A stretch of 64,000 nucleotides of DNA from Lepidodermella squamata (Eukaryota > Animalia > Gastrotricha). Positions 9,593 through 64,000 of the stretch are shown in pieces. The stretch lies in the NCBI GenBank assembly GCA_047495785.1, contig JBLDXI010000042.1, forward strand, positions 2,356,001-2,420,000. Direction: 5' to 3'. Made by a program: the position numbers and the translations under genes. How positions within the stretch are numbered: position 1 is the stretch's first letter; each line of letters opens with the position of its first letter. Below the pieces are notes generated by a model that saw only the letters and a list, made by a program, of their open reading frames with translations, was not told the origin of the DNA and searched no databases.

Positions 9593-10111
9593 AGAAGAGC
9601 AGCGGCGAAAAAATGTGTTCATTCTATAGCGAATAATTTGCAATTGTAAATTGTTATTTATATACAGATAAAATTCCTATCTATTGTTATGTTTTTACGA
9701 ATCATTTTTCTTCTCTATCTCTCAAAAATTCTCTCTTTTAAAACGATGAATTTCATTTCTTATACATGGCAAATGCTGCGCCAAGAAAATTTAAAACAAA
9801 TAAAATGAAAACTGCCTCGAAGCTCGAGTTTTATGTTGGTTTTCCCCGTCGAGACGTCAGAGATTTAACAAAATGGTAAACAAAAACGCGAGAGCGGGAC
9901 GCACATTGTAACTGCAAGGTATTTCAAGTCCAGTTGCTGTTGTCACTGTTTACAGCGAGCTTTGCGTACCTCGCTATTAGCCATTTTCGCCATTGTTCTT
10001 GGAACATTTTTGTTTCCTTAAATTAAATAAACCCGTTTTAGTAACGTGCAGCAGCCACAGCAGCTTAATTCTCGCGTAAATAACACTTCAATTTAACAGA
10101 TCATCCGCGCG

Positions 10112-10340
10112 ATGGCCAATTCAGGTGTTTCGAGCAACACGATCGTAAGATTTCATCAAAATCTCGGGATAGCAATCTAATCAAAAATTTTCGTAGACGA
10201 TCGCCGTTATTTTTTGTGTATTCGGCGGAATGATGGCAGTTGGTAATTAGGTGAAAAAAGCCACCTTAATATTTCTGATTTTTTTTATTTCAGTTATAAT
10301 TTTGTCAACCCTTCGAATCATTCCTTTCTGGGGTCAATAA
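10112..10340 (+). CDS. Single-pass membrane microprotein, paralog 1 (41 aa: MANSGVSSNTITIAVIFCVFGGMMAVVIILSTLRIIPFWGQ)
   Basis: Exons 10112-10144, 10197-10242 (46 nt), 10294-10340; GT-AG introns of 52 and 51 nt, phases 0 and 1; same structure as three neighbours. Confidence 0.8.
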
Positions 10341-11174
10341 ACAATTCTACCGATATACCGTCAGTCGAGACTCGAATTTGCTCAATCAATCGTTTGATGC
10401 CACTCTATAATTATTCGCTTTCACTTCTTGGTTTGGAAAAAATGAACTGGAAATACAAGCAGCAAGTGAATAATTTTATGTAAATAGAACAGATCATTTA
10501 ATAAACAAGACGATTTGGGAAATTTGCTTCTTTTACATCATCAAGGTAACAGAACCATAATATACTCCCACTCGACACGCGAAATCACTGCCGTGTGAGA
10601 AAAAAGCCCGTCGTTTTCGGTCATTGAGAGAAACTCTTATTCATGCGCGAAAAAGGAAATGTTCAGCAGTTCACGAGTCCGTGTGGGTGAGCGCAGAGTG
10701 TGTAAAAACCCAGTGCCAATATTAAGTGAAACATTTTATACGACACTATATGAATCGCAAATAATGTAACCCTCTTTCAAAGAATTCGAGGCGATGTTTT
10801 CATAAAAATAATAATGAGTGTGGCAGCGAATAAAACAATAATTAACAGCGACCCCTGCTTTTTTTTCGTCAACCGCGTGAGAAACGTTGTAGTGACTACG
10901 CGTGCGCGCTCGCTCTTTTGTCGCTACGTTACAACACTCGCTTGTATTATTTTTTCTCTTTCCCGCCATGCCTAAATGCCGCTCGCGCTTATAATATACG
11001 GCTATACATATAACAGTCATTACCTTGCGATTAAAGTGACATGACTCGCCAACTTTTAGCATACAAATCTAGTTTGATCAATTTTATCCATCTCTCTTAA
11101 TTTCAATGATGATGCTATCAATTTTTAATTGAACTTTATAGGCGAATCTTTACTCCAAGCAAAATTCAAGTAAA

Positions 11175-11407
11175 ATGAGTCAGGAAAGGTGCGACGCTTC
11201 GCAATCTACCATCGTAAGTGATCTTGACCTTGATAAAAATATACCTAAAAAACGTCATATATCTTCCAGACTGGAGCTGTGCTGACCGTCTGTCTTGGAG
11301 GAATGGTTATCATCTGTAAGCTACATTTGCCTCGGTTGAGCCATATAATTTTTATTCGAAATTTAGTGTTTTTGCTGTCCTCAACTGGGTTAATCAAATG
11401 GTTTTAA
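11175..11407 (+). CDS. Single-pass membrane microprotein, paralog 2 (41 aa: MSQERCDASQSTITGAVLTVCLGGMVIILFLLSSTGLIKWF)
   Basis: Exons 11175-11213, 11270-11315 (46 nt), 11367-11407; gtaag donors, cag/tag acceptors, phases 0 and 1. Confidence 0.8.
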
Positions 11408-11667
11408 CGATCTTCTGCCCTTTGGCGATCTGCCTATCAATCGAATTTATCCGCTCATTCGAACCTTCAAATAACCTTGCTCAAAGCAACTTATAGAGAA
11501 TCTTTCTACTGCCTGAATATGTTTAAGCTCATTGGAAGCCTCAAAGATGTAATCATAAGTGTTATTCACTGATATGCTCACAAGTTTTAAAATCGCTACT
11601 CATCCTCTCAGAAGATATGATAACAATCAATTTGTTATTTCAATTTTTAGGATTTTAATTCAATTGA

Positions 11668-11896
11668 ATGGCTGGTGGCCAATATGACATCACTGCGGTA
11701 AGATATCCAAACAAAAAAATTAGCCGAATTTAATTTCTAAATTTCAGCTGGTAGCGACTGTGATATCTATATGCGGAGGAGTACTCGTTATCAGTGAGTT
11801 GACCTTTGGTCATTCAATTTGTCATTTTTTTTAATTATCTATATTTCAGTCGTGTTACTTATAACGAACGGCATTATTCCATCGTCACCATCCTGA
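11668..11896 (+). CDS. Single-pass membrane microprotein, paralog 3 (40 aa: MAGGQYDITALVATVISICGGVLVIIVLLITNGIIPSSPS)
   Basis: Exons 11668-11697, 11748-11793 (46 nt), 11850-11896; gtaag/gtgag donors, tttcag acceptors, phases 0 and 1. Confidence 0.8.
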
Positions 11897-13045
11897 ACTA
11901 GCCGATGCTCGCCGCTGTTCTCTAGCTTTATATCTCACTTTTGTTGTCGTGTTGTGATCCTCTGGCAATTTTTACACGTTCGAATTCAGCATTGGATGAC
12001 TTACCCTGTCAACATCCCCGATTTTTCTCCCGTGTGCTTGTCCCTGAACAAATTATTTTGCTAAATATTGGAGAAAACAGAAATGTCAGGAAATAAAATC
12101 GAAACGACTACAAATTGTTTGTTTCCCGCTATAACAAGACATTTCGCGATATAATTTCTATCGCTGCTTTGGTGGCGTCGCTCAAATTTACAGAGGTGTC
12201 ATCAACATTTCTTACTACAATTTTCTGGCAACAGAAGCATTCGCTTGTCTATAGTTTTTCCGAGTCATTTATTTGTGCGAGAGACAGCCTTATATATTGC
12301 AAAAAGGAGTGAACCGGAAAATTGTTTTTGAAACGAGACGCTACTACATATATGCGATTGAGACGACATCGCTTTATTACAACCGCGATCCAATCGCGTA
12401 GATTCTTGGTTGGCCACTCTCTGTATAGATACGAGTCCCACTGCGAACGGTCCGTAAAATATATAGAAGACAACAATAAATCGAAAATGGCAGATAGAAA
12501 ATATCAATAATATCTGAATCGCAAACAATTCTTATAACATTATATTTGCAAAATAGTATGGCTAGTCTCAGCAGCTATAATCGAGAAAGCTCATAGCTCA
12601 TCATGAAAAATCCGCCAGAAGCAATCATTTTTTCACTCTAAAATCACATTGAGTAATAATGCTATCGGAAATCATCTTACTTGAATGTTGTAAAACACAT
12701 GCCGATATTTATCCTCATTATTCAGACACATTTTTTCCACCATTTTTAGTCGTTATAATCGAGAATTTAATGAATGAGTGCCGGGCAGTTTGACACATCA
12801 ACGGTAATTTTTTTCTTGCTTTTATTTATACCTAGCCTCTAATTACATTATCACTAAATGTTCATCCTCTCGCTGGTCTCAACCCTGTTTCAGGTTCAGG
12901 TTCACAGAAAATCTTTTTGAAATGGGAAGCGGTGCAAAATATCAATAAAATAAGTCGAAGAATTTTTGGCAATCCTTAGGAAATTACGTTTGACCCAGAT
13001 TTCTCACGGCGATTTTTTGTGTCATCACTAGCTGATTGCTGAATA

Positions 13046-13307
13046 ATGGCTGAGGTTATACTTAGCGGAAATAACGCTCAAGTAAGATCTCACATATGAA
13101 CATGAGGACCATAGAGATCTGCCAATTTACTCTTCGATTTCTTGTTTTTGATTCAATGTATAGTTGTTGGCGATGGTTATCACGATTGCGGCCGTTCTTC
13201 TGGTAATAAGTGAGTTTTAACCATTCCAATTTTGAAGTACTTATGCCAATTTTTATGTTTCAGTCGTCATTTTGGTTGCTAATGGCGCTTTCGAAATGGA
13301 GCAATGA
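13046..13307 (+). CDS. Single-pass membrane microprotein, paralog 4 (41 aa: MAEVILSGNNAQLLAMVITIAAVLLVIIVILVANGAFEMEQ)
   Basis: Exons 13046-13081, 13164-13209 (46 nt), 13264-13307; gtaag/gtgag donors, phases 0 and 1. Confidence 0.8.
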
Positions 13308-13781: not shown

Positions 13782-15495
13782 CTACGGCAAATCGAACTCT
13801 GATTCGCGAGTATCTACAGGCAGCGTATCGTTACGCCCGCCCATCGATGAGATGAAAGCCTCGAGAAACCTTATCAGAGCTGCGTCGTTCCGCGACGCCG
13901 GCGTCGACGTCATTCGGTTATTATTCGACAGCGGATTGTTGTTAGGCCGACCGGGTAAATTCGGCTGCCACGGCGGTCTAGTAGGTACAGCTGCTGGGTA
14001 CCTAGCCGGGGCGGGCGCGTATCTGCCCGGTTGTTGTTGCTGGGGTGGATTGTTGTATATGCTATTCACGGACGACGACGGCGGTGGTGGCTGCAATCGG
14101 CTGAGGCCCGATGACGCTAAGCCCATGCTCTGCATGGTCGAAGTAATCCAAGTTAGGTAATAAGAAATAGTGGTGTAAGCGCCGGGCACGCTTGAATCGG
14201 CACAATGCTCGCCACCGAACGAAACGACCCCAGATAACTCCCACGCGCCATTCTCCTTTTGGCAAATTGTTGGACCACCACTGTCTCCCTATAATAACAG
14301 GCATAATTTCATAAAATTTCAAAAAATTTTAATTACCGCGCAAGAGTCCCTGAGACCAGCAGGGTCGCCAGCGCAGAACATACGACCATCGTGAGCGATT
14401 TGCGGAATTTCAAGAGTGCTGTAGCAGGTATTCGAAGCTGAAGCTGGTAATGTCGTGATTCTAGGATAGGCACTCAACCGCGTTCCTTCCTTATTAATCG
14501 AACCCCATCTGTGAAAAATTAATATAAGAAATTATATTCAATTTTTTGCCTCATACCCAGCCACGAGACATGGTGCACTCCAACGTGGAACCGCAGAACC
14601 GGCCTCGGGCAAACAAGCCGGCTGAGTCCAGTCATTGAAGGCAACAGGGCGTTCTAGTTTAGCTATCGCAATGTCGTAGCCATTTTCGACAGTGTCATCT
14701 GCAAAACCAAACAAAAATTATATGAGCTGAATTCTTGAAACAAATTAAGGCGGATATGAATTTGCTATATAAACTTGCAGCTGAATCCAGGATACGTCCG
14801 ATAGCTAACAATGCGCAAGGTGACTGCAGTTGGCACGCTTTTCTTGACTAAATCATAGTCGCCAATACGGGCCACGAAGCTTGAAGCGTCTAGAAACCGC
14901 CAGGAATAATTGTTCTCGTCCACAAAGCAGTGAGCAGCTGTTAAAATGAATTGCGGATGTATCAGCGTAGCGCCGCAAACCAAGTCCCAATATTGCCTAG
15001 AAAATAATTGAATAATTATTGCAAATGAGACGAAAAAAATCCTAACCCATTATATTGAAGCGTGTCACCGGTTACCAATAATGCGACTAAAAAGGGCCAT
15101 GCCTTGGGTGCCAGCGGGGTTCCACCAATGATATTTCGAGCAACGGGGCGCTCATCTTCGTCGTTCGATGCGTCAGACAAATTCGATGCAGGAGGGTCTT
15201 CGAATCTCACGTCTGATTGAGCTCGTTTCGGCGGCCTGGCAGGAGTTGGCCGGCCTCGTCGGACAGCTCCGTCCGCTTCCCCTGGTACCGAAGCGTAATA
15301 ACTATTGCTGTACGATGACGTCGGTTGGTTCAAGTAAATGCAGTAGTCTTGAGTGAGCGAAATATAATTAATTAATTATTTCAATTAATTTCAATTGTAT
15401 TAACCTTGACTTGATGTTGAAGCAGCACTGGTCCGGTGCAAAATTACAAGCAGTAGCAGCGACAAACCGGCTGCTAGTCTGCTATAGGATAACAT
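13782..15495 (-). CDS. Secreted trypsin-family (S1A) serine protease, paralog A, with Pro-rich C-terminal extension
   Basis: Signal peptide [19 protein letters not shown]; RNIIGG; [17 protein letters not shown]; NGYDIAI; RDSCA|GDSGGP across an intron; multi-exon; ends EFDLP*. Confidence 0.9.
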
Positions 15496-16062
15496 CTGAT
15501 AAAAAATTAATCTCTACGATCTTTTCGACCTTGCCGAATTTTTGAATAATTAAAAAATCGAGATCAACGAAAAAAACATAAAAGACAGAAGATATCAAGT
15601 ATCATATGCGACAAGGGGTGTATTGTAATTATCACGTTGGTAAATACTATATCGTGTAAAATTCATGCTGGCAAGAGGTACTCTTAGCATTTATGTATAG
15701 TAAGAACGTGCCGCTGAAACACGAGTTGAGGGAGGCGCGAAAAAAACGAACCGATGAGAGCTTTGTCTTCAAGCGTCACTATAGTATGTGTGATAATGAT
15801 GGCAGAATAACCAACTTATTAGAGTAGAAAAAAACGTATGAAACAAAAGGTGGAGGTGTTATATAGAATAACCAATCAAAACCAACATTGCGGTGCATCC
15901 TTTTTCAGTCGAGCGTGACCCTGACCTGATTCCCTTTAGCGCAAGTAAACATTTATTGTCACTTTATAGCGACGCTTTATTTCATGGTAAGCAATGTTTC
16001 AACAGTTGAAACACCACCCAAAGCAAAGAAAAATCATGAAAGTCGAATTGAAAGTTGTTTTT

Positions 16063-17966
<1,904 letters not shown>

Positions 17967-18821
17967 TTTTGAATGCTTCAAAAACCAGCCAGGTGGATGT
18001 TTGTGCGCACAAAAACCAGGGCACCTCCGGTGCCAACCTTTTGACCCGGCAAACAAAGAACATGGCTTGCCTTGCGTGGGTGCAAGAGCACGAAAACCTA
18101 AAATCTCGCTCGCACTTTTCAATATGTGCCCCTAGATACTTCTGCATTTTTATTCCATTTCATTTTTTTTGTGTTATTCATCATTCCTTTGTCACTTATG
18201 ACTTGATAACAAGAGGCTGGTAACAACAACGCAGACGCCGTTGCATCGAGAACATATAAAACAGTTATTTTTGAAATTTAAGAGAAAGCTTTGAAGTCAC
18301 TCCAGTGAGAGGCGCGAACAACTTCACGTAAAATTGCGGACAAAACACACCAAAAATTCAGCGTCATTTAAGGTCGGAGAAAATGTTGAAGTTACAACAT
18401 CTGGAGTTTGATAGTCATCGAAGGTTTTTTTGAATAAATAAAATAAACAGAAAAAATAAATAATATTAAATGGTGCTATTATAACAGATTCTTTTTATAA
18501 AAAATATAGACACAGTGCACACACCGGCGGCAAGATAAAATCATTATTCGCTTCCTTCATTTTATATAAAAACCGCTCATCAGTCAGAGAGAAGATGAAG
18601 ATACTACAAGACATCATGCCCTATTTACGGAAAGAGAAAGATATTAATGAATTATTTCTTCGATTTTTCATAATTTTATACAAAAATATTCAGAGGTTAC
18701 GTCACTCTCAACAAATCAGACAAGACCACTTTTCAATTATCAGCTTTCATCTAGATAAATTCGAAATGTATCCTGTCTGATTTGTTTATAACAACCTTTC
18801 AAAAAGTTAATTATCGCGTCC

Positions 18822-21117
18822 CTATGGTAAGTCAATCTCTAACGGGTACAAGCGCGCTGTGGTCGATTCGACGTCATAGCCAGCATTTTGACTACCACTG
18901 GCACCAACGCCGCCGCCAAACGAGTTCAGCAGCAGTTGCAGCAAATTCAGAAGGGCCGCTGGTGATTTCGCCCCTTCTGGAGTTGTACTTTGATTGCTGC
19001 TATCCGCGGGTGGCAGCGCGACGCTTGCCGACGGACTTCGGGGCCCAGCGGCGCCAATTCCGGGTAGACTTGGCTGCCAGTTGTTACTGAACCGTGACGG
19101 GGCTGGTAGTGGAGGCGGAGGGGGCGGGGCCTGGAAAGCCGGCCGCCGGGTCGCGTAAACGTTAGTGGCCGGTATCAGCGGGTAGAGTGGTTGTTGGTGC
19201 GGAAGAGGGGCCGGCGCGCTTCCGACGCTGCCGCTTTGCGCCAGCATGTTCTGCATCGTCGACTGGATCCAACCGATGTAGTAAGCTATCGTCGTGTAAG
19301 CACCTATGTAAATGTCAAAAATTGACAGGAGGCGTGTAAAGATATGACGTATTTTTTCAGCGGATAGGTATTATTGTTATTTATTCAGGTTCGGACTTAC
19401 CGGGAATGCTCTGCTGCGCGCATCGCTCGCCGCCGAATGACACGATGCCGCTAAGCTCCCACGCGTTGTTCTCGCGCAGGCAAAATATCGGACCGCCACT
19501 GTCACCCTTTTTGCGAGAAAAATAGTAGTCAAGTGCATAAGCAATAAGTTCGTTCTGTTGGCCGCCCTACCGAGCATGAGTCTTTCTTGCCGGTGAGATC
19601 GCCGGCGCAAAATAACCGGCCGTCGCGGGCTGCTGGTGGCACCTGCAGGGAGTTGTAGCAGAGCGACTGGCGGGATGATGGCAGAGTCGTGAATCGAGGG
19701 ATGGGGCTGAGGCGACCAGCATTGTTAACAGCACCCCAGCTGCCAAATTAAAATCGGTCAGGAATATTTGAATCAATCAGGGTCATCAAAAGCTGGTGGG
19801 TTTTGTTAAACCGGGAAAAACCTAAATTTCTCTCAAGAAAAACGGAATGAAATTTTTTAGGAGAAACAAAAAGGCAAATATATCGATGGTATATAATTGT
19901 CAGCGAACCCTGCGACTTGGCATGGAACATTCGGCGGTGGGATTGAAGAGCTGCCGGTTGAATTTTGAGGTGGTGGCAAGCACGCTGGTTTTATCCAGTC
20001 GTTGTATTGAACCGGCCGATCGAGTTGGATGAGTGCTATGTCATAGCCATTTTCCACAACTTTGTCTATATGGAAAAAAATTAAAGAATATCGTAATAGT
20101 GCTAAATAAATTCATAAAATAATTCTAAAAAAAATGAAAATTTAACCTAAAATATTTTGGATAATGGCTGCATAAAAGAATACATACGGTCATAACGGGG
20201 ATGCGCTGTGTAACGAAGTACTCGAGCGTCAACCGCAGCAGGAACGTCATGCGGAACCAGCAAGTTGTAGTCACCGATGCGAACCCGAAATTCTGAGGCC
20301 TGCATAAATTTCCACGTGTAAATACCCTCGTCCCTATAAAAAGGCATCAATCAAACAAAAATGTCTTAAATTTCAGGGTCAAAACCAACACAAAGCAATG
20401 GGCTGCTGTGAGAATGAACTGAGGGTGAATCAAAGTTCCGCCGCACACCAAATCCCAATATTCGCTAAAAAAATTAAAATTTGATGAATATTTTTTTGAG
20501 AAATTCGACAAATTTTTACTTGTCGATTTTGATTGTATCTCCAGTGGTGAGCAGCGCGATGAGGAACGGCCAACTTTTTTGCTCAATCGGGTCTCCCGAA
20601 ATAATGTTACGAGAAACGGGCCGATCTTCCGGCGCCAACACCTCATCGGTATCATTGAGGCCGAATTGCGCCAGAGTGTCGCGAATAAACCGCTGATGAC
20701 TCTGCTGCTGTTGCGAGTAGTAATACGGCGAGGCGTAATTGTTACCCCGCAAGTAGTAGGACGGGTAAGCGGGCGCGTAGGACGGCCGTTGCGTCGGGCG
20801 CTGCATCGGCGCCGGCGCGTTCTGTTGCCAACCCTGGCGCTGAATTTGTGGCGCAACTTGCGCCTGACCAGATCGCCAATTCGCGGCATTAAATGAACTA
20901 GACGAGATCGAGTAAGGAAGACTGGATCCATAATTACTCGCCGAAGAGGAGAAATTTGCGTAAACGCAATAATCTAAGAGATTTTTCGGTGAAAAAAATT
21001 ATACGAATAAATGTGAATTTTTATTATCTCACCTTGTAATGGAGTAGATGCTGACTGTGTTAGAGGTGCGAGCATCGCAATGAGACCCGTTAAAATCGGG
21101 TAACTCATTTTAAGCAT
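18822..21117 (-). CDS. Secreted trypsin-family serine protease, paralog C
   Basis: Signal peptide (MLK)MSYPILTGLIAMLAPLTQS; RNIISG; [17 protein letters not shown]; NGYDIAL; KDSCS|GDSGGP; ends EIDLP*. Start could be 21108 instead. Confidence 0.9.
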
Positions 21118-23655: not shown

Positions 23656-24964
23656 TCATTCACCCTTGGCATTAGCAGTAAGTTTCTCTGCCGCCAAACG
23701 TATAACATCAGGTGAGAGCAGGCAGTCTAAAATATCATTAGTCAAGCTTTTCCCTTCATTTTCATCATCGTCATCATCATCGCTATCTGAGTCATCGCAG
23801 GCTGATAAAAACGCACTCGTGAAGTCAGAAAATGTCATTGGTTTCAGCAATTCGATGTTCCAGTTTTTGCTGCGGGCTGTTTCGACGATCTTCCTAGCGT
23901 TCAATGAATCATCGCCCGATAAGGGTTCAGCGTGATATTTGTTCAAAGCATTCTTAAGAACTCCCTCGCTTTCCGCCAACGTCAACAGGAGCTAATCAAA
24001 AGTTGAATGATTGATAACATAATAGACTGATAAAAATTGTTCCCGTTACCTGCTCGGTGTAGTTAATTCTGACCTCACTTTCGTGAGACGAGACAATCCA
24101 TCGAACAAGAGCCTCCTCAACTCGATTGAAATTGTCCAAATGAGGCTGAATTGATTTGAAATGAGATAAAAAACGTTAAATAAATTTGATAAAAATTACG
24201 ACATCAATCCAGGTATTTAGAGCTAACGCCGTGTCGAGGCAGCTTACGAAATGCCACCATCTCGGGGGCACATAAAGGATGTCCCCTGGTTTCAGGTCAA
24301 AGACATAAGGCGTTGTGTTTTGCAATTTCGGGTAATTTTTAAACAAAGGCAGCGCGCAACGGCTGAAAACGCTAGATTCTTCGTACGGCTGCCGCGTCGG
24401 ATATAAATTGCCAGTCTGGTTCGGAGGGAACAAAACCCAACGCTTTGAACCGAAAATTTGAGCAACCACATTGCAGCCGTATGAATCGAAATGGCCCGGG
24501 GTGTAAGCACCCGCTGAACCAATCCATAGAGTCGTATGTTGAGGGCCTCGTCCCTCTAGCCCTACTTCTGTCCAATCTATCAACTTGAAATAATGAAACA
24601 AAATGCGGTTAAGGTGGATTTTTGGACAAACTTGTAGCAAGTCTGGGCAGTTTTCAAATGTTTCGTGGACGTACTGATAGGCGGAATATAACGCAAAATC
24701 GTCGGTAGAAGCATGACCTATGACTTCATGAGTCGATTTGTGAACGAGCCATGATCGAAATTCTTCCGGGGTCAGCTCCAATCTCGGCGCCTCATCTTCC
24801 CATTGGATGCGATTTTCATGGCGGCTCAGAAGCCGGAAACTCAAAGGAATGTCGCAGAGCCCAGAAAACGAATCCAGATCTCTCAACTTTGACAAGAGAG
24901 GCCAATCTTTCGAGTCATTTAGGTGGATTACGAACGGTGAATTATAGTCAAAACCTTCTGCCAT
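23656..24964 (-). CDS. HSPBAP1: JmjC-domain 2-oxoglutarate oxygenase, HSPB1-associated protein 1-like
   Basis: Exons 24964-24200, 24145-24050, 23991-23656. TLWIGSAGAYTPGHFDSYGCN, YPTRQPYEESSVFS, PPRWWHFV (HxD...H triad), RVEEAL and C-terminal ILDCLLSP match HSPBAP1. Confidence 0.88.
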
Positions 24965-25349
24965 CTAACTCGAACCAAAAAATATCAGTTTCAATATTCC
25001 ACATTATCGCCGTTTATTCATCTAGGCAATTTTTAGAACACAGTCAAAGAAAATTGGATCGCAGTAGTAACAATATCATTATTAAAGTAGACAGTCACCG
25101 TGTTGAATGCGAGTGATTTGTCAGCAACAAAACGCACGTTGAGAAATTATTTTAAATTCGTTAGTCAACAAGCCAAAATTAAAATGGCTCAGCTCAACGT
25201 TGATCACAATAAGAATTTAAAAAGCTTGGCAAACGACGAATAATAAATCAACATTACAGAGGGCAAGCGGTGAATTTTTGCTAAACAAAAACATTCCCAT
25301 CACCTAAAATTAATCTCAAATTTCGAATTTGTTTTCACGGCTAAAATAT

Positions 25350-27153
25350 TTAAACAGCTAGCGCGTCTTCGATGACTTGCTTGACGAAATCAACCACAAC
25401 TGTAAAGAATTGAACATTAGGGAGGAATTTTTCATGAATGATGCAACTTACTTGAACGATCTGGAATAGATTGGGTGGTGCCGTACAACGCAGCTGTACC
25501 CATTTTCGTGTTTTCCTTGCCAGACGCAATGGCCTCCAGCGTTTCCTTGGCCGAATCTTCAAGATCTTTGCAGAAGTCGTTAACAAAGCCAGGTCGAGTG
25601 TGAGCATCAGTTAACGCAATGTGAAGAGCAGGCGGGTTCTGAAGGGCGTTGATGTGCCAGCCTCGTTTCGTCATGCGGTCATAAACCAGGTAAATGCAGT
25701 TGGCCATCGAGTCGTCAGCCATAGCCCAGGCGATGACCATCAATTCGCCACGGCCGTGCAGACGAAGGCCGGGAATTTTCTTGATTCTCTCGCGAATTTC
25801 CTTGCCAGTCTGCAGAATTTTCTTAGTTGCGTTGACGTAGCCATTGAAACCGACAGCTAGAGCAGAAGCCCAGGCACAGACAACAAGAGCACCACTTCGA
25901 CTGCCCGAGAGACCAGGTGTGGCGTAGACACCTCCAGGCCAGTCAGGGGCGACGAAGAGCTGGTAGGCACGCAGCGAGGCGTCGCGGTACAGCACCAGGG
26001 ACGAGCCTTTCGGGGCGAAACCGTATTTGTGGGTGTCGACTGAGATCGTTGTAACACCTTTAACGCGGAAATCAGTCGGGCCATGGGTGAATGGGAAGCC
26101 AGCTTCTGCCGCAAATGGAACAATGAAACCACCGAGGCAACAGTCGCAGTGAACGGGGATGTCGTACTTCAGGCCAAGAGCGCCGATTTCAGAAATAGGG
26201 TCAACAACGCCCCATGGGAAACTGGGAGCGCTGCCAAACAACATGCAAGTATTCTTCGTGATCGCACGTCGAAAGCCGGCAACATCAGCCTCGCCGCTAG
26301 GCATGAGCGGTTCGACTTTGACAACACGAATTCGAAACATTTCAGCGGCCTTTTCCAACGCACAATGAGCAGTGGTGCTGCAAACGATTTCCGGCCATCT
26401 GACACCGCGATCTATTGCCCGATTTCTGCAAGCCAAAATAGCCATGACAATTGACTCAGTTCCACCTGATGTAACAGCTCCGCATGGTGGTTGATCTTCT
26501 GGACCGTTATACAAACGCCAGACCCAAGAGACCAACTCAGCTTCGCAACGACGGGTATCGCCGAAAACGTCGAAGTGAAGCGGATTCGCGTGCAGCTGAT
26601 GGCGAAATACTTCCACAGCTAAATCATCGAGATCGTCACGAATGTGATAAACGCCACCAGAGAGTTTGGAATTACGCCAGGTCGCACCATCCTTAGCGAA
26701 TACATGGGAGTATGCGTTTAGGCGAGTCATGATATCCTTAGTTTGCATGGCGTCAGCTGGAAGTCTCGGGAAAATTGAGAGTAATTTCTTTTCCTCGGGA
26801 GTGCAACCAGCATCGGTTGCTTTCTGCTTATCAAGACCTGCTTTGGCCTTGGCTAGTTCTGTCTGGATTTTCGCCTTGACAGGCGGTAAACTTTTGACGA
26901 ATTTGAAGACGGAAGTACGGAGGCGAGTATAAGGAGTATCAATATGGTCAAACAAGTATGACCTCAGTCTCGCGAGAAGGTAGCCGATTCCAAAAGCTAG
27001 CACAACAAGCGCCAGCCGAGAGATCCCCAGAGAGGTCAAACGGTCGTCCAGTTTCGTGGCAATATTGCACAACAATGCTGTGAACCATGCCAAGTTTTCT
27101 GCCGCTTCCTTGCCCAGATACTTATTAGAAATGTCGTGTATTATATTCGACAT
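25350..27153 (-). CDS. SGPL1: Sphingosine-1-phosphate lyase (PLP-dependent)
   Basis: Exons 27153-25452 and 25399-25350. N-terminal TM, SGGVY, NPLHFDVF, TSGGTESI, VHCDCCLGGF, SVDTHKYG (PLP Lys), GSRSG, AALYG. Confidence 0.95.
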
Positions 27154-27258
27154 TTCAATTATTAAAATTCCTAAAAATTGGTAGAAATATATGTTAACAA
27201 GTTTATGCCGAGATGGGAGAAATAATTATGATAGATGGCGTATTAATTATTAAATGAC

Positions 27259-28072
27259 TTAAGATTCTCCATCCTCTTCTTCCTCCTCCGACCTGCAACA
27301 AAAACGAAGCATAAACGGATTGTATTGAAACAAATACTTACGAAGATGGCGGAAGGTCATAGTTTCGATTTTGAGGGCGCATTCCAGATGGCAACACTTT
27401 ATTTGGATTGTATGAAAGGCCTTCATCTTCTTCACTCTCCAAGGAAGGTAAGTCGGGCTGATCTTTCTTGTCCTTGGAAAAATTATCCAAGTACCGAGTC
27501 TGCACTTCTATAACCTCAGCAGCACTTTTGCAGGCTGAGTACGCTTCAAGAAGCTCGGCATTGAGCGTAAGAAACTGCTCGCCCCATTTAAAAGGACGAA
27601 GAACGATTTCCGCATCATTCTTCAAACCCACGATGGCTAATGCAGCAGCGAAAGCTTCGGCACAAGACAGCTTACACGGGCGCCCATAGTTTATAGGATT
27701 TGCAGCAACCAAGTAAGGAAGCAAGCGCTGAATGGGCGCTCGAAGGCGCCTTATGCTAGGCATGCTCTCAGGAATTTTCGCCCAGGAGCAATCAACTACG
27801 CCCAAACCATGCAGCTCTATTACATCCCGATCAATAGGGCAGATAGTAGAAGACGCTGTAGGAGATAGCACGACACCTTTGCAGGAGTCTCGAATGCGCA
27901 TTTCACGACACATTCCCATACGCACTAGTTTCCGACCACTGCACTTTTTTATATCACATTGACCCAGATCCCACATCGCCAAACGACAGCTTGGTTTGCT
28001 CAGCTCTTCTGATTCATCCTCCGGATCATGAGGCGGCCAGTGCACCGAAGATTCTTCAAATTCAGACGCCAT
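27259..28072 (-). CDS. TSR3: 18S rRNA aminocarboxypropyltransferase
   Basis: Exons 28072-27342 and 27292-27259. AMWDLGQCDIKKCSGRKL, VDCSWA, RLLPYLVAANPINYGRPCKLSCAEA, FKWG; acidic tail. Confidence 0.95.
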
Positions 28073-40743: not shown

Positions 40744-41490
40744 TTATTTGAAAACCCCGAATTTCTTCTTACCATTCGGGTCAACTTCATAGTCTGGCTT
40801 TTGAACTGGATTTTCACCCAAGTGCGTGTAAGTTTTCATTGAATCCGTCAAATGTTGCTGCTTTTCGGCCAGCGTCAACAGAGGTTCGCCTCCGATCTTG
40901 CGTCTCCGTTCCGCTTCATTGGCCTTCAAATTCGCAAAATCTTGCCGGTTACTGTCGTCAACAAATCTCTCCTCCAAAGCCGACCCTGGATCGTCCAAGA
41001 GAAGTTTTTTCTGAGCGTCCGGGCCAGGCGTCACGTTCGCCTTTGACCATGCATAGGTTGCTTCAATCGCATCGCCAACTGTGCCTTTTCTTTCATTCTC
41101 AGGAACGGCAATGAACTTTAAAATGAAGGGTTTAACTTCAGGCCGATTCAAATGATCTTCGACAATTTTTATTCGCTGTTCCAACGGCACACCAGTACCA
41201 GGATCCGAGAACCTTTCCAACATCCCTCTCACGCTTTTGTACGAAAACGTGTGGTGAAGAGTAATTAGAGACTCGAACAACACAGGGTTCACTTTCTGAA
41301 GAGCTGGCGGTATTTGACTCGGCGGCAGAACAGTTCCATCTGAAGCAGTGACCTGGATTCCCGGGTTAGCAGGGTCGCTGCTTTTTTTCACGTAGTAACG
41401 CGCCACATCCTTGCCGTTTTCGTCCTTTTTAACCAGTGTATAGGTAGTAACGCCCTTCATCAAGGCATCAATAGTTTTCGAATTGAGCAC
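40744..41490 (-). CDS. Orphan duplicate of the C-terminal domain of the giant SecA-like protein (intact frame, no clear start or acceptor)
   Basis: From TYTLVKKDENG onward paralogous to 42123-42826; 248-codon open frame that abuts the repeat at 41529. Confidence 0.6.
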   Translation of the reverse strand: MLNSKTIDALMKGVTTYTLVKKDENGKDVARYYVKKSSDPANPGIQVTASDGTVLPPSQIPPALQKVNPVLFESLITLHHTFSYKSVRGMLERFSDPGTGVPLEQRIKIVEDHLNRPEVKPFILKFIAVPENERKGTVGDAIEATYAWSKANVTPGPDAQKKLLLDDPGSALEERFVDDSNRQDFANLKANEAERRRKIGGEPLLTLAEKQQHLTDSMKTYTHLGENPVQKPDYEVDPNGKKKFGVFK

Positions 41491-41528
41491 TTGCTTTTCC
41501 GAAATTTTGCAAAACAGCCCAGCGACCG

Positions 41529-41918
41529 TTATATACTGCGCTCCGTGTTGTTATACCTTGAAATTCGGCAATTGTTCTCATTCAATCTTCAATCGATAAT
41601 AACAACTACAATTATGACATCTAAATTATAATAATTAAAGCGGGATGCAATAAAGAAGTCCCTATGAAACAAAACATACGCCTTTTGCAATCGTTGCCAT
41701 GTCGAATATCACTCGATCCTGATCAGACATCGTCCCCATATGCAACACTGAATGCCTGTTTTACATAGTCCGCAGTTGACCTTTCCGATATTAAAATTGA
41801 TACCTTATATTCCAGAAATTGAGCTGGAATCTGGGCTTTTTCGTGTCGATTTCATGGCAGTTGTAAACCGGATAACTAAAACCATCAAACCAAATTACGT
41901 AGAATGAAAGGTGTATCA
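41529..41918. repeat. Direct-repeat copy 2 (see 37319-37655)
   Basis: Same sequence as 37319-37655 with small indels. Confidence 0.85.
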
Positions 41919-42122
41919 GTAACCGAAATTGGTTTCAGTAACCGAATTGCCGTTATTCATGTTTCAATTCAATTGAAAGTTTCTAAATAAAACCAAAATT
42001 TCAAGAGTAAAATTTTAATAGCAGAATTGAACTCTTGACAACAACCGGTATGCAATTTAAACGCTGGAATTAATGGCACACAATTTGTCACGTTTTGATT
42101 ACAGCTCACTGGAGTAGAGCGG

Positions 42123-45100
42123 TTATGTAGTTGGTTTGGCAACCCCAATGTTCCCCCCGTTATTCGTGTCGACTATATAGGGTGGATTTTTAACTGGATG
42201 TTGACCCAAGTTCGAGTAAGTTGTCATTGAAGACTTCGCTATCCGTTGCCTGTCGTCCAGTGTCAACGGAGGGTCATTCCTACTCAATGCCGCTTCATTG
42301 GCCTTCAAAGTATCAAAATCTTGCCGGTTACTGTCGTCAACAAATCTCTCCTCAAGAGCCGACCCTGGATCGTCCAAGAGTAGATTTCTCTGAGCATCTG
42401 GACCTGCCGCCAAGTTCGGCGGGTATAAGGCATAGGTTGCTTGAATCGCATCGCCAACTGTGCCTTTTCTTTCATTCTCAGGAACGGCAATGAACTTTAA
42501 AATGAAGGGTTTAACTTCAGGCTGATTCAAATGATCTTCCACAATTTGTATTCGCTGTTCCAACGGCACACCAGAATCCGGGTCCAAAAACCATTCCAAC
42601 ATCTTACACAAGCTACTGTAGGAAAACGTGTGGTGAAGAGTAATTAGAGACTCGAACAACACAGGGTTCACTTTCTGAAGAGCTGGCGGTATTTGACTCG
42701 GCGGCAGAACAGTTCCATCTGAAGCAGTGACCTGGATTCCCGGGTTAGCAGGGTCGCTGCTTTTTTTCACGTAGTAACGCGCCACATCCTTGCCGTTTTC
42801 GTCCTTTTTAACCAGTGTATAGGTAGGTGGTGTAAGTGATTTTTTGTCGGCTTTACTAGGACCGCTGCCTCCGTTTTCGTTAGCAGTGTTATTGGGACCG
42901 CTGCCTCCGTTTTCGTTAGCAGTGTTATTGGGACCGCTGCCTCTGTTTTCGTTAGCAGGGTTATTGGGACCGCTGCCTCCGTTTTCGTTAGCAGGGTTAT
43001 TGGGACCGCTGCCTCCGTTTTCGTTAGCAGTGTTATTGGGACCGCTGCCTCCGTTTTCGTCAGCAGTGTTATTGGGACCGCTGCCTTCGACAACTAGAAA
43101 GTAGCCATCGTCCAGATTTACGGTATACTCGTTGTATTTTTTATCGCTTTTAATCATCATCTGGAAATATACAAGAAGCATTGCCTGTGAACTAGAAGAA
43201 TATACTGTATCAGTGGTGAGGCGCCTCGACCCTTTTTAATTGCTAAACGTCGCGAGACAAATTCCAGAAATAATTCATTGTATCAGAGTATCAGTGTGAT
43301 TGCTTTCTGAAAGCAGAGCATTTCACAATTAAATTACACATGAATTCAGGTTTAGTTTTTTTAACTCGTTTATAAACTCGTTTTTTGCAACCAGGTAAAG
43401 TACAGGGTGTTCAAGAAATAATAGCCAGGCTATTTTTAGCGTTGGACTTCAGCCGGACGACTCGCGACTTTTCTAACACTGAAGACGCGAGTCTTAACGG
43501 CGTTTTTTGTAAAAGCGGGAACTTTTGTTTTGACCTTGATTTTTTTTTATTCCCACCTCAAAACCAAAAATTGAAAAAAAATCCAAACCAAAAAGAAGAT
43601 GACGTCAGATGACGTCGAAACGTCACAATCTCAAATAAAAAAGGAAAATGGTCGCAAATTCTTCGCGCTGTTGTTCACATTAAAAATGAAAAAAAAATCG
43701 TCGAGGAAATAGCATCATCAAAAATCACATTTCGTGAATCGGAACTGAAAGGTATTGATTACAATAGCCAAGTTGATGAAAAATGATAGGTGAAATATGG
43801 ACCAACAGTTTCCGGCTGGACATTTTAAGATTACTCAACCAATTTGTGGTATTTTTGTTTCTGATTAATTATTCAAAGTAACGCGTCTTACTGTAGTTAC
43901 TGTACTTACTAAAGTTGGGTTTTTGGACCTTTTTGCTTTATATATGGGCGGAGAAGTAACAGCTTGCTATTGGCGGGAAAAAGCAATCGCCGTACATAAC
44001 TTTTAGGAACGAACGCGATGGGAAATGGGAATTGTTTTCCTGAATCACATTAATATGCTGATTTTCAATAACCGCTTTCGAAGTAACTCGGCGACGCAAA
44101 AAATTGAGCCATTTTCGCAAGTCTGCGCGGAAATGTTTCCTCTCACACTGGCTTTCATTTTTCATGGTGACAGTTACCCCGAATGTCATCGGGAAAAGTA
44201 AAACGAGGTATTGAGCTGAGAGCTGAGTAAAATGGCAAAGCAGCAAATGAAAGTTGGATTGGAATGTTTTCGTTATGAATTTCATAAAATTATAAAGTAT
44301 TCAAAAACCGAATTGAGAGATATATTTTTTAATTTTTCCATCTATTTCGACACGCGATATTGAAAACTGAAATCGGTGGGTTGATTTGGGCTAGATGGTT
44401 CAGGATCCAGCTTGACATCTTGCTCGCGTGTCGTCTGGCTTAAGTCTAACGCTAAACATAGCCTGGCTATTATTTCTTGAACACCCTGTATGAGCCTTTC
44501 TCAACTTCAAACGTAAAATATTTTGAACAAAAAATTTGCAATCCCTTCCAAGTACGTTTCGGGTTGGCATATTCGCGCTTAAATAAGTACGCGTTTTCAA
44601 CTATTCAACGAATAGACACACAGCGAACTGACACAACGAATAGTTGCACGAAATAAAATTTTCAATAATATGTTGTTTACATTAGGAACGGGTTTTATTC
44701 GTTTATTGGGCAAAGATGAGGCGCGCAGCCGTGGGCTCGTTCTTTGACGTTTCTATGGCTCGCATGGAATGAAAATGATTCGCTGTGTGTCTTAGTTCAG
44801 TTGCTGGTCGTGCAGCTACTATCGAAAAAATGTGGACCCGATCAGCTGAGGCGATGTAACAGGGCAGTTAACGTTGAGCGTCGCGCTCAGGTTCGAATAA
44901 AAACCGCACGGATGGATCAAAATTGATCCGACTAGCACGCACGAGAAAACTTAACATTGTTTAAATCGAAGGGTCGACCGACGAAGGAGACAAATATAGC
45001 ATTCGTTTTAAAAATATAGTATTAGTAGATGTGCTCATGCAATATTTTTTGATACAGCACTCGTAAATCGTTTATATCTGAACTCGCCGTACTCGATTTA

Positions 45101-48100: not shown

Positions 48101-51100
48101 CCGAAATTAGCTGATTCAGTTAGCTGTGAATACCTGTGCACATCTTGGAGGTTTATTACACTTTGATAAAAGGATGAATCATAACAAGTTTTTTTGTCGA
48201 TTTTTTTGCCTTCGCTGCTGCGCTGCTCTTCGAGAAAATACGCCAAGTCAGAGATTTCAACTGAAGGCTGACAGGACAAAAAATCACACAGACCCTATGA
48301 CAATACTTAGCCCCATTACCATGCGAGCGGAGCGTGAGCCGGTCTTGGTAGTTTTTTCAAATCAAAACCGCCCGAGTCAGCCATTAACCCGCCAACGCCT
48401 ACGACGTGTATACACGCGTTTTTCACTTATAATACCCGACAAATTCAGATTTCATCAATCAGCCTTTTCTTTCCACCTGATAATTTATTTCACTATGATT
48501 GCGATAAAAAACATCGACCTCGAAAATTTTTTGCTAAGACACCTGTGCCCTCTGTCGACGCAAAGTTGGCAACTGCCTAAACGCTGGTTTACACGCTTAT
48601 GGTGCGTCTTAACACGCCACAATGTTCACACTACTAGTGCGTGTTCACACGCGAACGACTTTGCGTCACAACACGCCAAAGACATTAACTAGGGCAAAAA
48701 TAGCTATAAAACGCGAGCTGAATGCATTGAAAAAAATCAGAGTTTCATCGATACGTAGTTTTTGAGATTTTCTGATCTTTTTCTGGCAATTCAACTGGCA
48801 TTTGCATGGCTTCTGGCGAAAGGGCTAGGTAAACCTGCTGAATACCGCGCTGGCTATTAATACCGAAAACAATCAAATTGATTGCGCAAGCGGCCTGATT
48901 TCGGCATCGCGCGCTACCTTGTCAATTCAATCACTAATCAATGAAAACCTGAACTATTTAATTTTATCATTTTAAATTTTTTTCATAATTTGCAACCTGA
49001 ATGATTGATTATTGTTGATTTTAGCAAAGATCGTTGACATTCCTGCAATTTCCGAATAAAAGTGGCGGAATGTCTATTCGTACATAGTATGTACGCGAAA
49101 ATTGCTATTCGTACATAGGTATGTACGCAGAAATTGCTATTCGTACATAACTATGTACGCGAAAATTGCTATTCGTACATAGTTTCGATATGCTTTTTTC
49201 TAAGATAGACAACTTCCTCAATTTTCACCCCATCAATCTAATTTTTTGCGTGCTGATAGCTGACCATCAGGCCTATCTCCCCTCAAAAAATCACCATTGG
49301 ACCCCCTAAGGTAGATTCGCAAAATGGCATTATTTGAATTGTTTTTCACGACCCTAGCTTGAATACTTTGGAAGATAATCTGACGAAATTTGACCACTAG
49401 ATAGGCCTCACTTTGCTGCATCTCCCTGTGAAATTCCATGCGAAGCGACCGCCTCTTTCAGCTATATGCGGCTAGTCTTAGATGGTCGACGTCCGTAATT
49501 AACACTACTTTATTTTTATAAACAACACTAGCCTGTTCAACCAGCGAACACCAGGGCATGACCGGCCCTCGACTCGGGTTTCTCACAGGCCCAGCTGGTC
49601 CTCTGCTCTGGTGGTTTTACTAAGCCACTAGTTTTCTCTTTTCATCCGGTAAGATCCGCTCAAGCCCGTACCCTAGCACTCGGTTTCGTGAAGCTGGGGC
49701 GGGGGCCTTAGGCAAGCCCACTCAGCGTGGATCTGCCAATTGTTAATTCATCGGACTGGATCCATCCATAGCCGTACCCTCGCACTCCGTTTCGTGATGC
49801 TTGGGCGGGGCCTTAAGCAAGTCCATTCCGCGTGGCTCTGGATTCGGTTTCGAGATCGTTGACCAGTCTAGGCTACAATCCTTGGATGCCCGGCCCTGGA
49901 TGATCTGCTTTCAGAGCATTCAAAAAGGGTGCCCACTTAGACGGTTAAGGCCTGATATTTTTGCAAACACACTTAACACGCAACGGACGTCGAAAATTCA
50001 AAAATATATGGTTAAGGACAGTAAATTTGTCATGGCGAAAGCCTGGATGATGAGGACGCACGTCTGATACCATTATGGTTCAGGCCAGTCTGTGATCCCC
50101 CGATTGCAGTGGCACTGTAGGGGCCGGTTTGATGGCCCGATCGGCGTGGTTTCTGAGCCAAATGCCCCAGTAAGTTAGGGGGAGGAGGGGGGGGGGAGCC
50201 GCTTTTCCGATTCAGTAGTATGAAACTAGCGCAGAGACACGCCCCGGACCCCTGTCGGACCCGCGTGAAATTGGCCGGTTTCCTAGGGTGTTGGCCTAGG
50301 ATTCGGGGCACATTTTTTCACTAGTTTCAATTAAAACACCATTTACTATTTAGAGTAGCGGGGTATAGTTAAATAATGTATCCAATATTAAATATGTACA
50401 ATCAAGTAGCTGAACACCGGTAAAAAAAGGAATGCAGTCAAAAATTTTCGCAAGAAGGGGAAAATTCAAATACCTATATTTAAAATATTATCTGAGCGCT
50501 CACCTTCAATTCATCGCCCAATCGACCAGCACGTTTTCTTGTTTTGATTGATTTTCTAAGTGATTCCAAATCTTCCTCAGCCGTTTTCTTCTCTTCCTCA
50601 GCCATTTTCTTCTTTTCCTCAGCCGTTTTCTTCTCTTCCTCAGTGGCATTTGAACTTAGTGACTTCCCAAGCTTGGCGGTTCCATTTTCATGTTTGTACA
50701 TTCCGGCACTGAACAGCAGCGTGTTAGCATCAAGAGGGTACCTCTCCCGAATCCAAGACGCAGCAGCCATAGATCTCGAAAAATTGGACGCGTTTTCGCG
50801 AATTTCATCCGCGGTCTTCGTTCGAAGATTTTCAACGTCGACCGTCTTACCAGTTTGTTCGTAAAGAATCTTGCTGTAAACCGAATAGAAGCAGTCATTC
50901 GGCTTCGATTCAACATTCACCCGCTCGCCTTTCGCATCGATGTAGAAAGCATGGCCGACTTTATCGCGTCCCTGCTCGTCCTTACCACCGGGTTTAATGA
51001 CAACCACTGTGATACCCTGCGCTTTCTCCTCATCTGTCGGCTTGTAGTTCTCATCTGAGACGACTTTCAGCTTCAAACCGTACTTTTTGTTAAGAGTCGC

Positions 51101-54100
51101 CATCTCCGCAATGTCGGCTGGCTTGTCCTTCAGAACGTCCTTCATAAGCTGCTCAAGTTCGGGAGTAACCTTGCCGCCACTCGCCTCAGCCTGCGCATGA
51201 TGCAGCTGAGCAAGCCGCTCGTAGTCGAGGCAGTAGGCCTTTGCGTTATAATTGACCTGTTGGCCGATAGTTCGGTACTCGCCGAATCCTTGCATGAACG
51301 ATTGCTCGTCTGCGTTCAAAGGCTCTCCTTTTTCTTTCCGCTCCTTCAGCTTGTCATACCTGAAAAATTAATAGCACGTGGAATACAACGTCAAAGCTTG
51401 GAAATTAAAAAAAAAATCAATCTTTTAGCAAAAGGAGCCTATTTCAGGCCTAATTTCCAAGCTAAGAATAATGTGTCTATGTTGATATCAACGCCGGTGA
51501 CAACGAAATAAGAGTAGTTACTGCCAGAGGCGTAGCCAGGATTTATTTTTGGGGGGTGATAATTTTTTTACCTGCGGCTTCGAAAATTTCGGGGTCTAAA
51601 AACACCTAAAAAGCCTATTTGCGAGCGAAGCTGACGCTTTTTCGGGCATTTTCAAGCTGAAAATAGCCTTAGATTGCATTAAACGTTGCATGGTTCACAG
51701 AAAATTTGTAACCGAAGACCACTTTCAGGATTTCTTTGGGGGGTGTTTAATACCCAAACCTCCCCCCCCCCCCCCCCCCCTGTCTACGCCTCTGGCTACT
51801 GCCTATTGTCCAAATCAAAATACCCCTATGACACAAAATGCACTCGACTACTTGAAAAGATGGTAAGACTTTACTTTGCGTGGACTTTTGAATGCTAAGC
51901 ATCAGCTGTTCGGCTGTCGGTCCCGAAACGCTAACGGGCTCAAACTCTCTCATGCACGACAATAATCTGAAAATGCTTAGCAAAGGGGCCATTACTCATA
52001 TTTCTCCGATTGGTATGGACGACCAGCTCGATGTTTTCATTTGCTCACAGGAATCGGAAGATTACTTCTCTTCTCCGAAGGTTTTACCTAGCGTGGGTAG
52101 TGACCATCTCCCAGTCACAATATAATATGAAGCGCTGACTTAGGTAACGAAAAGAAAAAATGGATATTTCCCAGAGTTAAGATACGACTATCGAAATGTT
52201 GAATGGCCTAGATTTCAGTCAGCACTGGATGAACTAGCAGATCGCCTTTTACGCGAAGTCCCAAAGTCTCTCTCCTCCCAGATGGAAATGGATATTTTCT
52301 ATGACCGTGTTGAAGATGCATTTGTCAAATCGCGAGATCAAAACATTGCCAAAATCCCAGCTGCCAAGCTGAAGATATGCAAAACAACAAAAGACATTGA
52401 ATTCGCGACGAGAAGACGCAATTGGCTCCAACGGCTCTCCAAACGATACCAAACTGTTTCCGTTCGCAAAGCTTACTAATCAGTCAGGTCAAAAGTAAAT
52501 GCAATGTGGGAAAAAGCCTCAAACTCTTGGCTCAGGAAAAAGCAAATATGCGCTAATGGTCATTTTGGTCTCTTTTGGAAAGCTATCGATTCGTCTATGA
52601 AAAAAACAGCATCCTCAACCACACACGTGATGACCGACCTGGAAGTAAACGGCCGTTCCATCAATTCCGACGTTGAAAAAGTTACTGTCATGAGCAACCA
52701 CTTGGAAAAAACGTTCAGTAAGTGCAACGATTTAAATTTCTCAGCAGACGATCTCGCTTTTCACGAACAAGCCAAGAATTCACTCTCAATGCCGTCGCGT
52801 TGCGTTTGAAAGGGGCCGCTAAGTTTCTATTATTATTGCAATATAATATGAAAAACCAAATATTACCCCAAATTTACGTCGTTATGCTCCTCTGGAGATG
52901 ATCTATCGAATTATGCAGGTGGTATAAACATGACTACTTTCGTGGTCATTAAAACTTTTATTTTATTTAAATGGTGTTTCTTAAATATGATCACAACGAG
53001 TATTTCTATTATTCCTTCTCTCGAAAACCGTTGAGCCCAATGGGAATCAGCAAATAAACTGCCGCTTTTATTGATATGATGGCTCTCGCTTAGCTGATTA
53101 TTTTGGATAGATCATTTCGAGATCGGCCCCTTTCAAACTCGACTCCTTGCGTTACGCGACGATGCGTTGCGTTTGAGTTGCGTTTGAGCAAGGAGTCGAA
53201 GATAACAGCGCAAATAACATGTTATCGTTCGAAGAAATCAAACGGCATATCTCGGTTCTAAAAACGAAAGCTCCGTGGCACTACAACCTCCACTATACTC
53301 TGCTCAAAAAAGCGGGTGAAAAAGCTCTTCTACTTCTTCCTTTTTCATTTACAAGTGTTTTGACTTACGGTTTCACTCCTTCGAAATGGAAAATAGCAGT
53401 CATTACCCTTATTCCGAAACCAAGTTAAAAACCATCGTTCCCCGAAAGCCGAAAGGTCACCGTCCGATATCTCTTCTGCCAAACTATTGGCAAATTATTT
53501 GACAGAATTATCAACGAGAAAGTTTTGAAAATTTTAGTTCTGGCTGAGGGGTTGCGTTTGCGAATTTCTCAGTTTAAGATATGTCTCGCCCTCTACTTGC
53601 TCGACGCGAACCCTAAAAGAGCTTGTGGCAAATTGGACTATGCACGAATCGCCGATGTGATTCGGGGTTCATACACCTGGTTTTTCACTATCCTAGTCAT
53701 AGGCTCAATAAAGCGACGATGTTGTTTCGAGGTGGTGGGCTATTTGAACCACCTTGTCAAATATGAACGTGAAAACCATCTAGTGGTCAACAAGAAGAAA
53801 ACTAATGCTGTTTGGTACGGACGACGATGACAAGCCCCTCGAACTTAGGAGTTTGGTTCAGCAGCGACCTATCTTTCAAAGAATCCATAAGACAATGCCA
53901 CTTGAAAATGGCTAGAATCGCTGGAATGCTACCGACCCTTGAAAAATTCGATGATATAACTATTGTAAGCTTGAGTTTATTGTAACGCGGGGTGGTTCTA
54001 GCGGCTGGCCTGTACTGAGCTGAACTGTGGGAGCTTAGATCGTCAGAAGGCTGCGCCATCAGTTCAGTTGCAACTCTTAAAACAAGCGCTGAAGCTACCG

Positions 54101-63796: not shown

Positions 63797-64000
63797 CTGG
63801 AAAAGACGAAACGTGAATAAATATTGGAAAAGAGGGTGCAAAGCACAAGCCCTGAATATAGGGTCCCAGCATTAAACTACGCCAAAATAAGGCTTTTTGA
63901 GTTTTACTTTTCACGTATAGGAGATAAATGAAGTCAAAGTGACGGCCCTCGTTCGAAGAAGCGTGAAGAAATGTCGCCATCATATTCTTTATGAGCGATG

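What the first reader, a model, noticed from the sequence alone, without database searches (positions are those of the whole stretch)
10112..13307. Hidden tandem family of four ~40-aa single-pass membrane microproteins with a conserved three-exon structure
Seen: an apparently ORF-poor stretch holds four spliced genes, each with a 30-39 nt first coding exon, a phase-0 intron, an exactly 46-nt middle exon, a phase-1 intron and a short last exon. They give 41, 41, 40 and 41 aa peptides with a polar N-terminus, a ~22-aa hydrophobic helix (C-x0-2-GG in three of four) and a short tail (LRIIP/TGLIK/NGIIP/NGAF). Nucleotide sequences have diverged strongly while length, intron phase and hydropathy are kept, which argues for selection on the peptides. 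Established: single-helix micropeptides of this size regulate pumps and membrane complexes (sarcolamban/phospholamban-type regulins, OST4). Inference: this is an unannotated, possibly lineage-specific family; I recognise no known family.
Basis: partly seen in the sequence, partly recalled or inferred. Interest (0 to 1): 0.88.

Follow-up and report, generated by a model that had tools for sequence, protein, structure and literature searches.

The report
Conserved orphan membrane microprotein gene cluster
Four tiny three-exon genes next to agrin in a small invertebrate (probably the gastrotrich Lepidodermella squamata) encode 40-41-residue one-helix membrane proteins that are kept by selection, matched in a distant relative and (shown for two genes) spliced; they fit no described family and their partner is unknown.

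Summary
Observation confirmed. Four genes lie at 10112-13307 with exons of 30-39, exactly 46 and 41-47 nt. Shuffled DNA gives 0.007 such models per region against 4 seen. A cDNA run shows both g1 introns and g3 intron 2 spliced at the predicted GT..AG sites. A distant relative (neighbouring proteins 60-73% identical) has three syntenic counterparts behind agrin, each with the 46-nt exon. Silent sites are near saturation while 58% of residues are kept. g4 is a g3-type duplicate absent there. Sarcolamban/regulin, FXYD and OST4 features were not met. Best reading (about 50%, inferred): accessory single-helix subunits that pack on a larger membrane protein. No partner, translation or localisation is shown. 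The scan noted other membrane-microprotein arrays elsewhere in this genome; kinship with them is untested.

The parts
10112..10340 (+). g1: exons 10112-10144, 10197-10242, 10294-10340; 41 aa
   Evidence: Both introns spliced in a cDNA contig spanning 10040-10385; 0 changes in 126 coding nt vs 9 substitutions and 1 indel in 103 intron nt in DNA run X2; ortholog at L004 9524-9767
10040..10111 (+). 5' UTR of g1; cDNA begins at 10040
   Evidence: Template-switch adapter is the loose end before 10040 (table 7); one contig only
11175..11407 (+). g2: exons 11175-11213, 11270-11315, 11367-11407; 41 aa
   Evidence: Ortholog at L004 10544-10786 with 16/27 identical residues over exons 2-3; all X2 indels here are intronic; thin cDNA cover, junctions not seen
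11668..11896 (+). g3: exons 11668-11697, 11748-11793, 11850-11896; 40 aa
   Evidence: Second intron spliced in cDNA, 3' UTR to at least 12051; ortholog at L004 11040-11259, 24/37 identical, exon 1 9/10
13046..13307 (+). g4: exons 13046-13081, 13164-13209, 13264-13307; 41 aa; g3-type duplicate with Ala-Ala in place of Gly-Gly
   Evidence: Groups with g3 and its ortholog at 96/95 support, on a long branch; X2 indels fall outside its coding exons; splicing not shown; no copy in the relative's cluster

Best explanation
An old, lineage-restricted family of single-pass membrane microproteins acting as accessory subunits. Shown: the genes exist, g1 and g3 give spliced RNA, and three paralog types have been kept separately since a deep species split. 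Inferred: each peptide is too short for co-translational targeting, so it is inserted after translation like a tail-anchored protein (topology open). One helix face carries small residues (exon-2 positions 3, 10, 11, partly 14) and packs closely on a helix of a larger membrane protein such as a pump, channel or transporter, perhaps also on a sister paralog. The bulky face meets lipid. The short, paralog-specific tails contact the partner outside the membrane and give each paralog its own effect or tissue.
For: Codon-position mismatches 36/16/54 over 85 ortholog codons, p=4e-9 for position 2 vs 3; agrin control 21/9/60 over 86. pS 0.62-0.86 vs pN 0.27-0.32. Ala at position 3 is invariant and position 10 is Gly/Ala in 7 of 7; both lie on one face (180-240 degrees) with positions 7, 14 and 21; Leu19 is invariant and Gly23 is in 5 of 7. 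Tails are conserved within but not between paralog types: g1 C-tail 7/10, g3 N-tail 9/10. A generic lipid filler would not need that. Precedent: sarcolipin acts through a short conserved luminal tail (PMC8396278); FXYD paralogs tune one pump by tissue (PMC10406431).
Against: No partner, localisation or translation data. No polar or charged intramembrane residue and no basic flank of the kind regulins and FXYDs use. A small-residue stripe fits self-association equally well. Neighbours (agrin, trypsin-like proteases, a mucin-like gene in the relative) point to no partner. Only two independent species were available.
Confidence: 0.5

Rival explanations
1. Self-assembling proteolipids: the peptides oligomerise with each other through the small-residue face and act structurally in a specialised membrane (for example the lamellar outer cuticle of gastrotrichs, recalled from own knowledge) or form a small leak pore.
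For: Very hydrophobic, almost charge-free helices with an i/i+7 small-residue stripe. Other scan notes report several further arrays of one-helix microproteins in this genome (unchecked).
Against: Paralog-specific tail conservation suggests specific contacts. No pore-lining polar residues. No paper found tying such peptides to gastrotrich cuticle. Low copy number and no sign of homogenisation.
Confidence: 0.25
2. Highly diverged members of a known regulator family (sarcolamban/regulin, FXYD, OST4 or another small membrane family).
For: Size and layout (about 10-residue head, one helix, about 10-residue tail) match that class; short hydrophobic sequences lose homology signal fast (paralog-to-paralog scores only 6-18 bits).
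Against: No WLL/Trp in the helix, no Asn34-like polar residue, no FXYD motif, signal peptide or RRR tail. No Pfam match near a cut-off.
Confidence: 0.12
3. Minimal precursors: the helix is a signal sequence and the 7-10-residue C-terminal piece is released as a small peptide.
For: The g1 C-tail is better conserved (7/10) than its helix; small residues follow the helix in most members.
Against: The hydrophobic stretch (21-28 residues) is far longer than a cleavable h-region; no basic n-region, dibasic sites or amidation signal; face-specific conservation inside the helix and the conserved g3 head would be unexplained.
Confidence: 0.07
4. Chance or non-coding: the models are artefacts, or the RNAs work without their peptides.
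For: Junctions of g2 and g4 not seen; no protein-level data.
Against: Null of 0.007 models, spliced cDNA, frame, exon length and amino-acid conservation across species.
Confidence: 0.02

Closest known systems
Regulins (sarcolamban, sarcolipin, phospholamban, myoregulin, DWORF)
   Same: 30-50 aa, one helix, short head and tail, encoded by small ORFs that annotation misses; a conserved tail can carry function (PMC8396278)
   Different: No polar residue at the Asn34/Asn11 position, no WLL, no basic residue at the helix start; central Gly-Gly and a G-[IVL]-I-P-like tail instead; coding sequence split over three exons
FXYD proteins and Dmist (Na,K-ATPase regulators)
   Same: Small single-pass paralogs; small residues on one helix face (own knowledge)
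   Different: No FXYD motif, signal peptide or basic C-terminal cluster; Dmist has no non-vertebrate orthologs (PMC10406431)
OST4 (oligosaccharyltransferase subunit)
   Same: About 37-40 aa, one helix with Gly near the middle (own knowledge)
   Different: No Pfam Ost4 hit; OST4 is normally a single conserved housekeeping gene, whereas these are four paralogs at 11-48% mutual identity
Other membrane-microprotein arrays noted in this genome (s1-384305, s1-404885, s1-430002)
   Same: Tandem mini-genes of about 40-44 aa, one helix, matched in a relative, per unchecked notes
   Different: Sequences not available to me; common ancestry untested

Membership tests
Sarcolamban/regulin | Polar residue at the position of PLN Asn34 / SLN Asn11 near the helix start | tested here: not met
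   Helix cores hold no Asn, Asp, Lys or Arg in any of 7 peptides (feature). Register without an alignment is approximate.
Sarcolamban/regulin | [quoted passage not shown] | tested here: not met
   No Trp within the best 21-residue segment of any member (feature)
Sarcolamban/regulin | Binds SERCA and changes its calcium affinity | not testable with these tools
   Needs co-precipitation or reconstitution
FXYD | FXYD motif before the helix, signal peptide, basic C-terminal cluster | tested here: not met
   g3-type heads have Tyr-Asp only, without the Phe; at most one basic residue after the helix (features)
OST4 | Match to the Pfam Ost4 model | tested here: not met
   Not listed at E up to 10 for g1-g4; HMMER filters hide weak hits and the relative's peptides were not scanned
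Any Pfam family | Score above the gathering cut-off | tested here: not met
   Best were FUN14 14.2 bits (cut-off 22.5), ERGIC_N 12.7 (27), HA2_C 12.9 (21.3), Osw5 13.6 (30): generic hydrophobic matches
Unannotated small-protein clusters in the large databases | Profile hit with the joined peptides | not tested
   Left out under the operators' rule; single exons are too short and the g2 read-through is blind (ortholog E 3.6e3)
Single-pass membrane microprotein (general class) | Under 100 aa, one helix of 15-25 residues, coding constraint, transcript | tested here: met
   class described in PMC13240139. Membrane insertion itself is predicted, not observed.

The most novel reading that the evidence does not exclude
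The cluster is one branch of a lineage-wide expansion of one-helix proteolipids in gastrotrichs that hetero-assemble through small-residue faces to build or tune a membrane system special to this phylum, a role with no counterpart among known microproteins.
Probability: 0.12. Interest if true: 0.75.

Novelty: new variant of a known kind. Interest (0 to 1): 0.45.

Why it matters
It shows that real, old and separately constrained genes of 40 codons, split into exons of 10-15 codons, hide in apparently empty DNA of a little-studied animal group; gene callers missed them in the relative's contigs too. If they are accessory subunits, they add an independent origin of the regulin/FXYD design and give a small testable set (three paralog types, a defined packing face). 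Without a partner the functional gain is modest.

Tried and rejected
Pfam, PDB sequence and ESM Atlas searches by contiguous reference found nothing usable; these queries carry intron-derived residues and have little power. JGI metagenome scans with the agrin last exon and with g1 exon 3 confirmed no locus; a 14-residue query can fail the tblastn step, so this is weak. A closer relative in Logan (L007, 84% identical agrin piece) ends 180 nt after the agrin stop. Nothing similar lies in the 10 kb behind ostracod agrin (L008); two other ENA contigs had no DNA. No further member in the window by exon-level profiles. Shared non-coding 8-mers between the species did not exceed shuffles and muscle-type MEF2/CArG sites are not conserved. 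Rejected: alternative 3' exons of agrin (own ATG, own cDNA 5' end, agrin stop at 9592); Schistosoma-type micro-exon genes (those have symmetric exons, own knowledge; here phases are 0 and 1); a Cys motif. Structure prediction was not run because it needs the joined peptide.

Full report
Setting. The window is animal DNA of about 44% GC with introns near 50-60 nt. The cluster sits 519 nt behind the stop of an agrin gene (NtA, Kazal and LamG domains; best named hits are agrins) and before three trypsin-like protease genes on the minus strand. The nearby sphingosine-1-phosphate lyase has its best named hit in the flatworm Macrostomum (45%) and no rotifer among 120 listed hits. The scan counts 147 pieces and 1993 windows, close to the published Lepidodermella squamata assembly of 122 Mb, 157 contigs and 43% GC (PMC11660948). 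The host is therefore probably that gastrotrich. This is inference; some scan notes say rotifer.

Observation. A generic finder for ATG exon, hydrophobic middle exon of 37-55 nt and short last exon returns exactly these four models in 128 kb of both strands, against a mean of 0.007 and a maximum of 2 in 1000 shuffles of the region.

Transcription. Run X1 behaves as cDNA: it has a template-switch adapter at 10040 and a poly(A) end at 13700 for the opposite-strand protease. One contig covers g1 from 10040 to 10385 with both introns removed at the predicted sites; another skips g3 intron 2. g2 and g4 have only thin cover. A loose end at 11196 is the reverse complement of a variant of the g2 stop region, which suggests a fold-back cDNA of g2 but shows no junction. 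For g4 one contig lies inside intron 1, so its splicing is unproven. Contig depth cannot rank expression, and this is one study.

Selection, close range. Run X2 is genomic DNA of a sample about 98% identical. Its contig over 9299-11012 has 26 substitutions and 7 gap letters, all listed: none in the 126 coding nt of g1, nine substitutions and one indel in its 103 intron nt (Fisher p about 6e-4). All indels in the contigs over g2 (to 11379) and g4 lie outside coding exons. For g3 the list is incomplete.

Selection, long range. Following agrin led to three ENA metagenome contigs of a distant relative (lyase 60%, agrin pieces 63-73% identical; CASK-TSR3-lyase-JmjC order kept). Directly behind its agrin stop lie three genes in the same order and at similar spacing, each with a 46-nt middle exon: L004 9524-9767, 10544-10786 and 11040-11259. 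Each is closest to its positional partner (16, 16 and 15 of 27 residues over exons 2-3, against 3-11 for other pairs apart from g3-g4 at 13). Over 85 ortholog codons, mismatches at positions 1, 2, 3 are 36, 16, 54, and 30 of 49 identical residues use different codons; the agrin control gives 21, 9, 60 over 86. Two samples of the relative differ at 0 of 369 coding and 4 of 338 intron positions. g4 groups with g3 and its ortholog (96/95; the g1/g2 side is unresolved) and is missing from the relative, where a Thr/Ala/Pro-rich gene follows. The three samples are one species, so only two independent species are compared.

Anatomy. Each peptide has a polar head of 9-12 residues, a helix of about 21-24 and a tail of 7-11. 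Numbering from the start of exon 2: Ala3 is invariant, position 10 is Gly or Ala in all seven, 11 is small in six, Leu19 is invariant and Gly23 occurs in five, followed by hydrophobic-Ile-Pro in four of seven. Positions 3, 7, 10, 14 and 21 fall on one face. The cysteines are not aligned and are absent in the relative, and its g3 ortholog has Ala for Gly-Gly, so smallness is what is kept. Heads and tails are conserved by paralog type (g3 head 9/10, g1 tail 7/10). Flanking charges are too few to fix topology.

Mechanism. A conserved small-residue face is the usual sign of close helix packing, and conserved tails point to contacts outside the bilayer (established knowledge). With about ten residues after the helix, the chain ends before the helix leaves the ribosome, so insertion should be post-translational (inference). 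I put 50% on accessory subunits of a larger membrane protein, 25% on self-assembling proteolipids, 12% on unrecognised members of a known family and 7% on cleaved mini-precursors. Nothing here identifies a partner.

Comparison. The class is known: regulins are tail-anchored peptides that need a polar residue at the Asn34 position, and sarcolipin needs its tail (PMC8396278); sarcolambans share a WLL motif and a basic residue at the helix start (10.1101/2020.07.19.211243); FXYD and Dmist have a signal peptide and basic tail (PMC10406431). None of these features is present. No Pfam family reached its cut-off. The peptides may work like these regulators but are not filed as members. A paper search on gastrotrich transmembrane families found no description.

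Limits and verdict. The sensitive joined-peptide search was left out by rule, so absence from other phyla is not shown. Other notes of this scan report several similar arrays in this genome; I could not compare sequences. Verdict: real, conserved, undescribed family of a known kind of molecule; interest 0.45.

Noticed in passing
window 11141, 11650, 10099; L004 about 10995, 9493: T-rich acceptor-like AG sites lie shortly before the ATG of g2, g3 and some orthologs with no donor found; g2 stop to g3 start is only 260 nt (253 in the relative). Could be UTR introns or leader trans-splice sites; the g1 cDNA reads through its site unspliced.
   Followed up: partly
window 13782-21105, minus strand: Three tandem trypsin-like proteases, each with a long Pro/Asn-rich C-terminal extension that ends in the same short acidic-Leu-Pro motif before the stop. 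The relative keeps trypsin genes next to the JmjC gene (L006).
   Followed up: no
L005 4195-5082 and L004 12241-12336, minus strand: In the relative a mucin-like gene of Thr-Thr-Thr-Ala-Ala-Pro repeats stands where the window has g4 and the proteases.
   Followed up: no
window 23656-28072, minus strand: TSR3, sphingosine-1-phosphate lyase and a JmjC gene are packed tightly on one strand, head-to-head with CASK; order kept in L001, L002, L006. Possibly an operon.
   Followed up: partly
window 61524-63983, minus strand (and 50480-57486): Very large, nearly intronless gene with a SecA-type P-loop/helicase domain.
   Followed up: no
window 40744-43181, minus strand: Two related orphan ORFs sharing a duplicated block, one with short Gly/Asn/Pro repeats; no Pfam hit for the longer one.
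   Followed up: partly
window 12764-12938: DNA run X2 has two haplotype contigs here, one identical to the window and one with 16 substitutions and 7 gap letters, pointing to a locally very heterozygous intergenic patch.
   Followed up: no
window 10336-10341: The g1 stop codon is part of an AATAAA signal.
   Followed up: no
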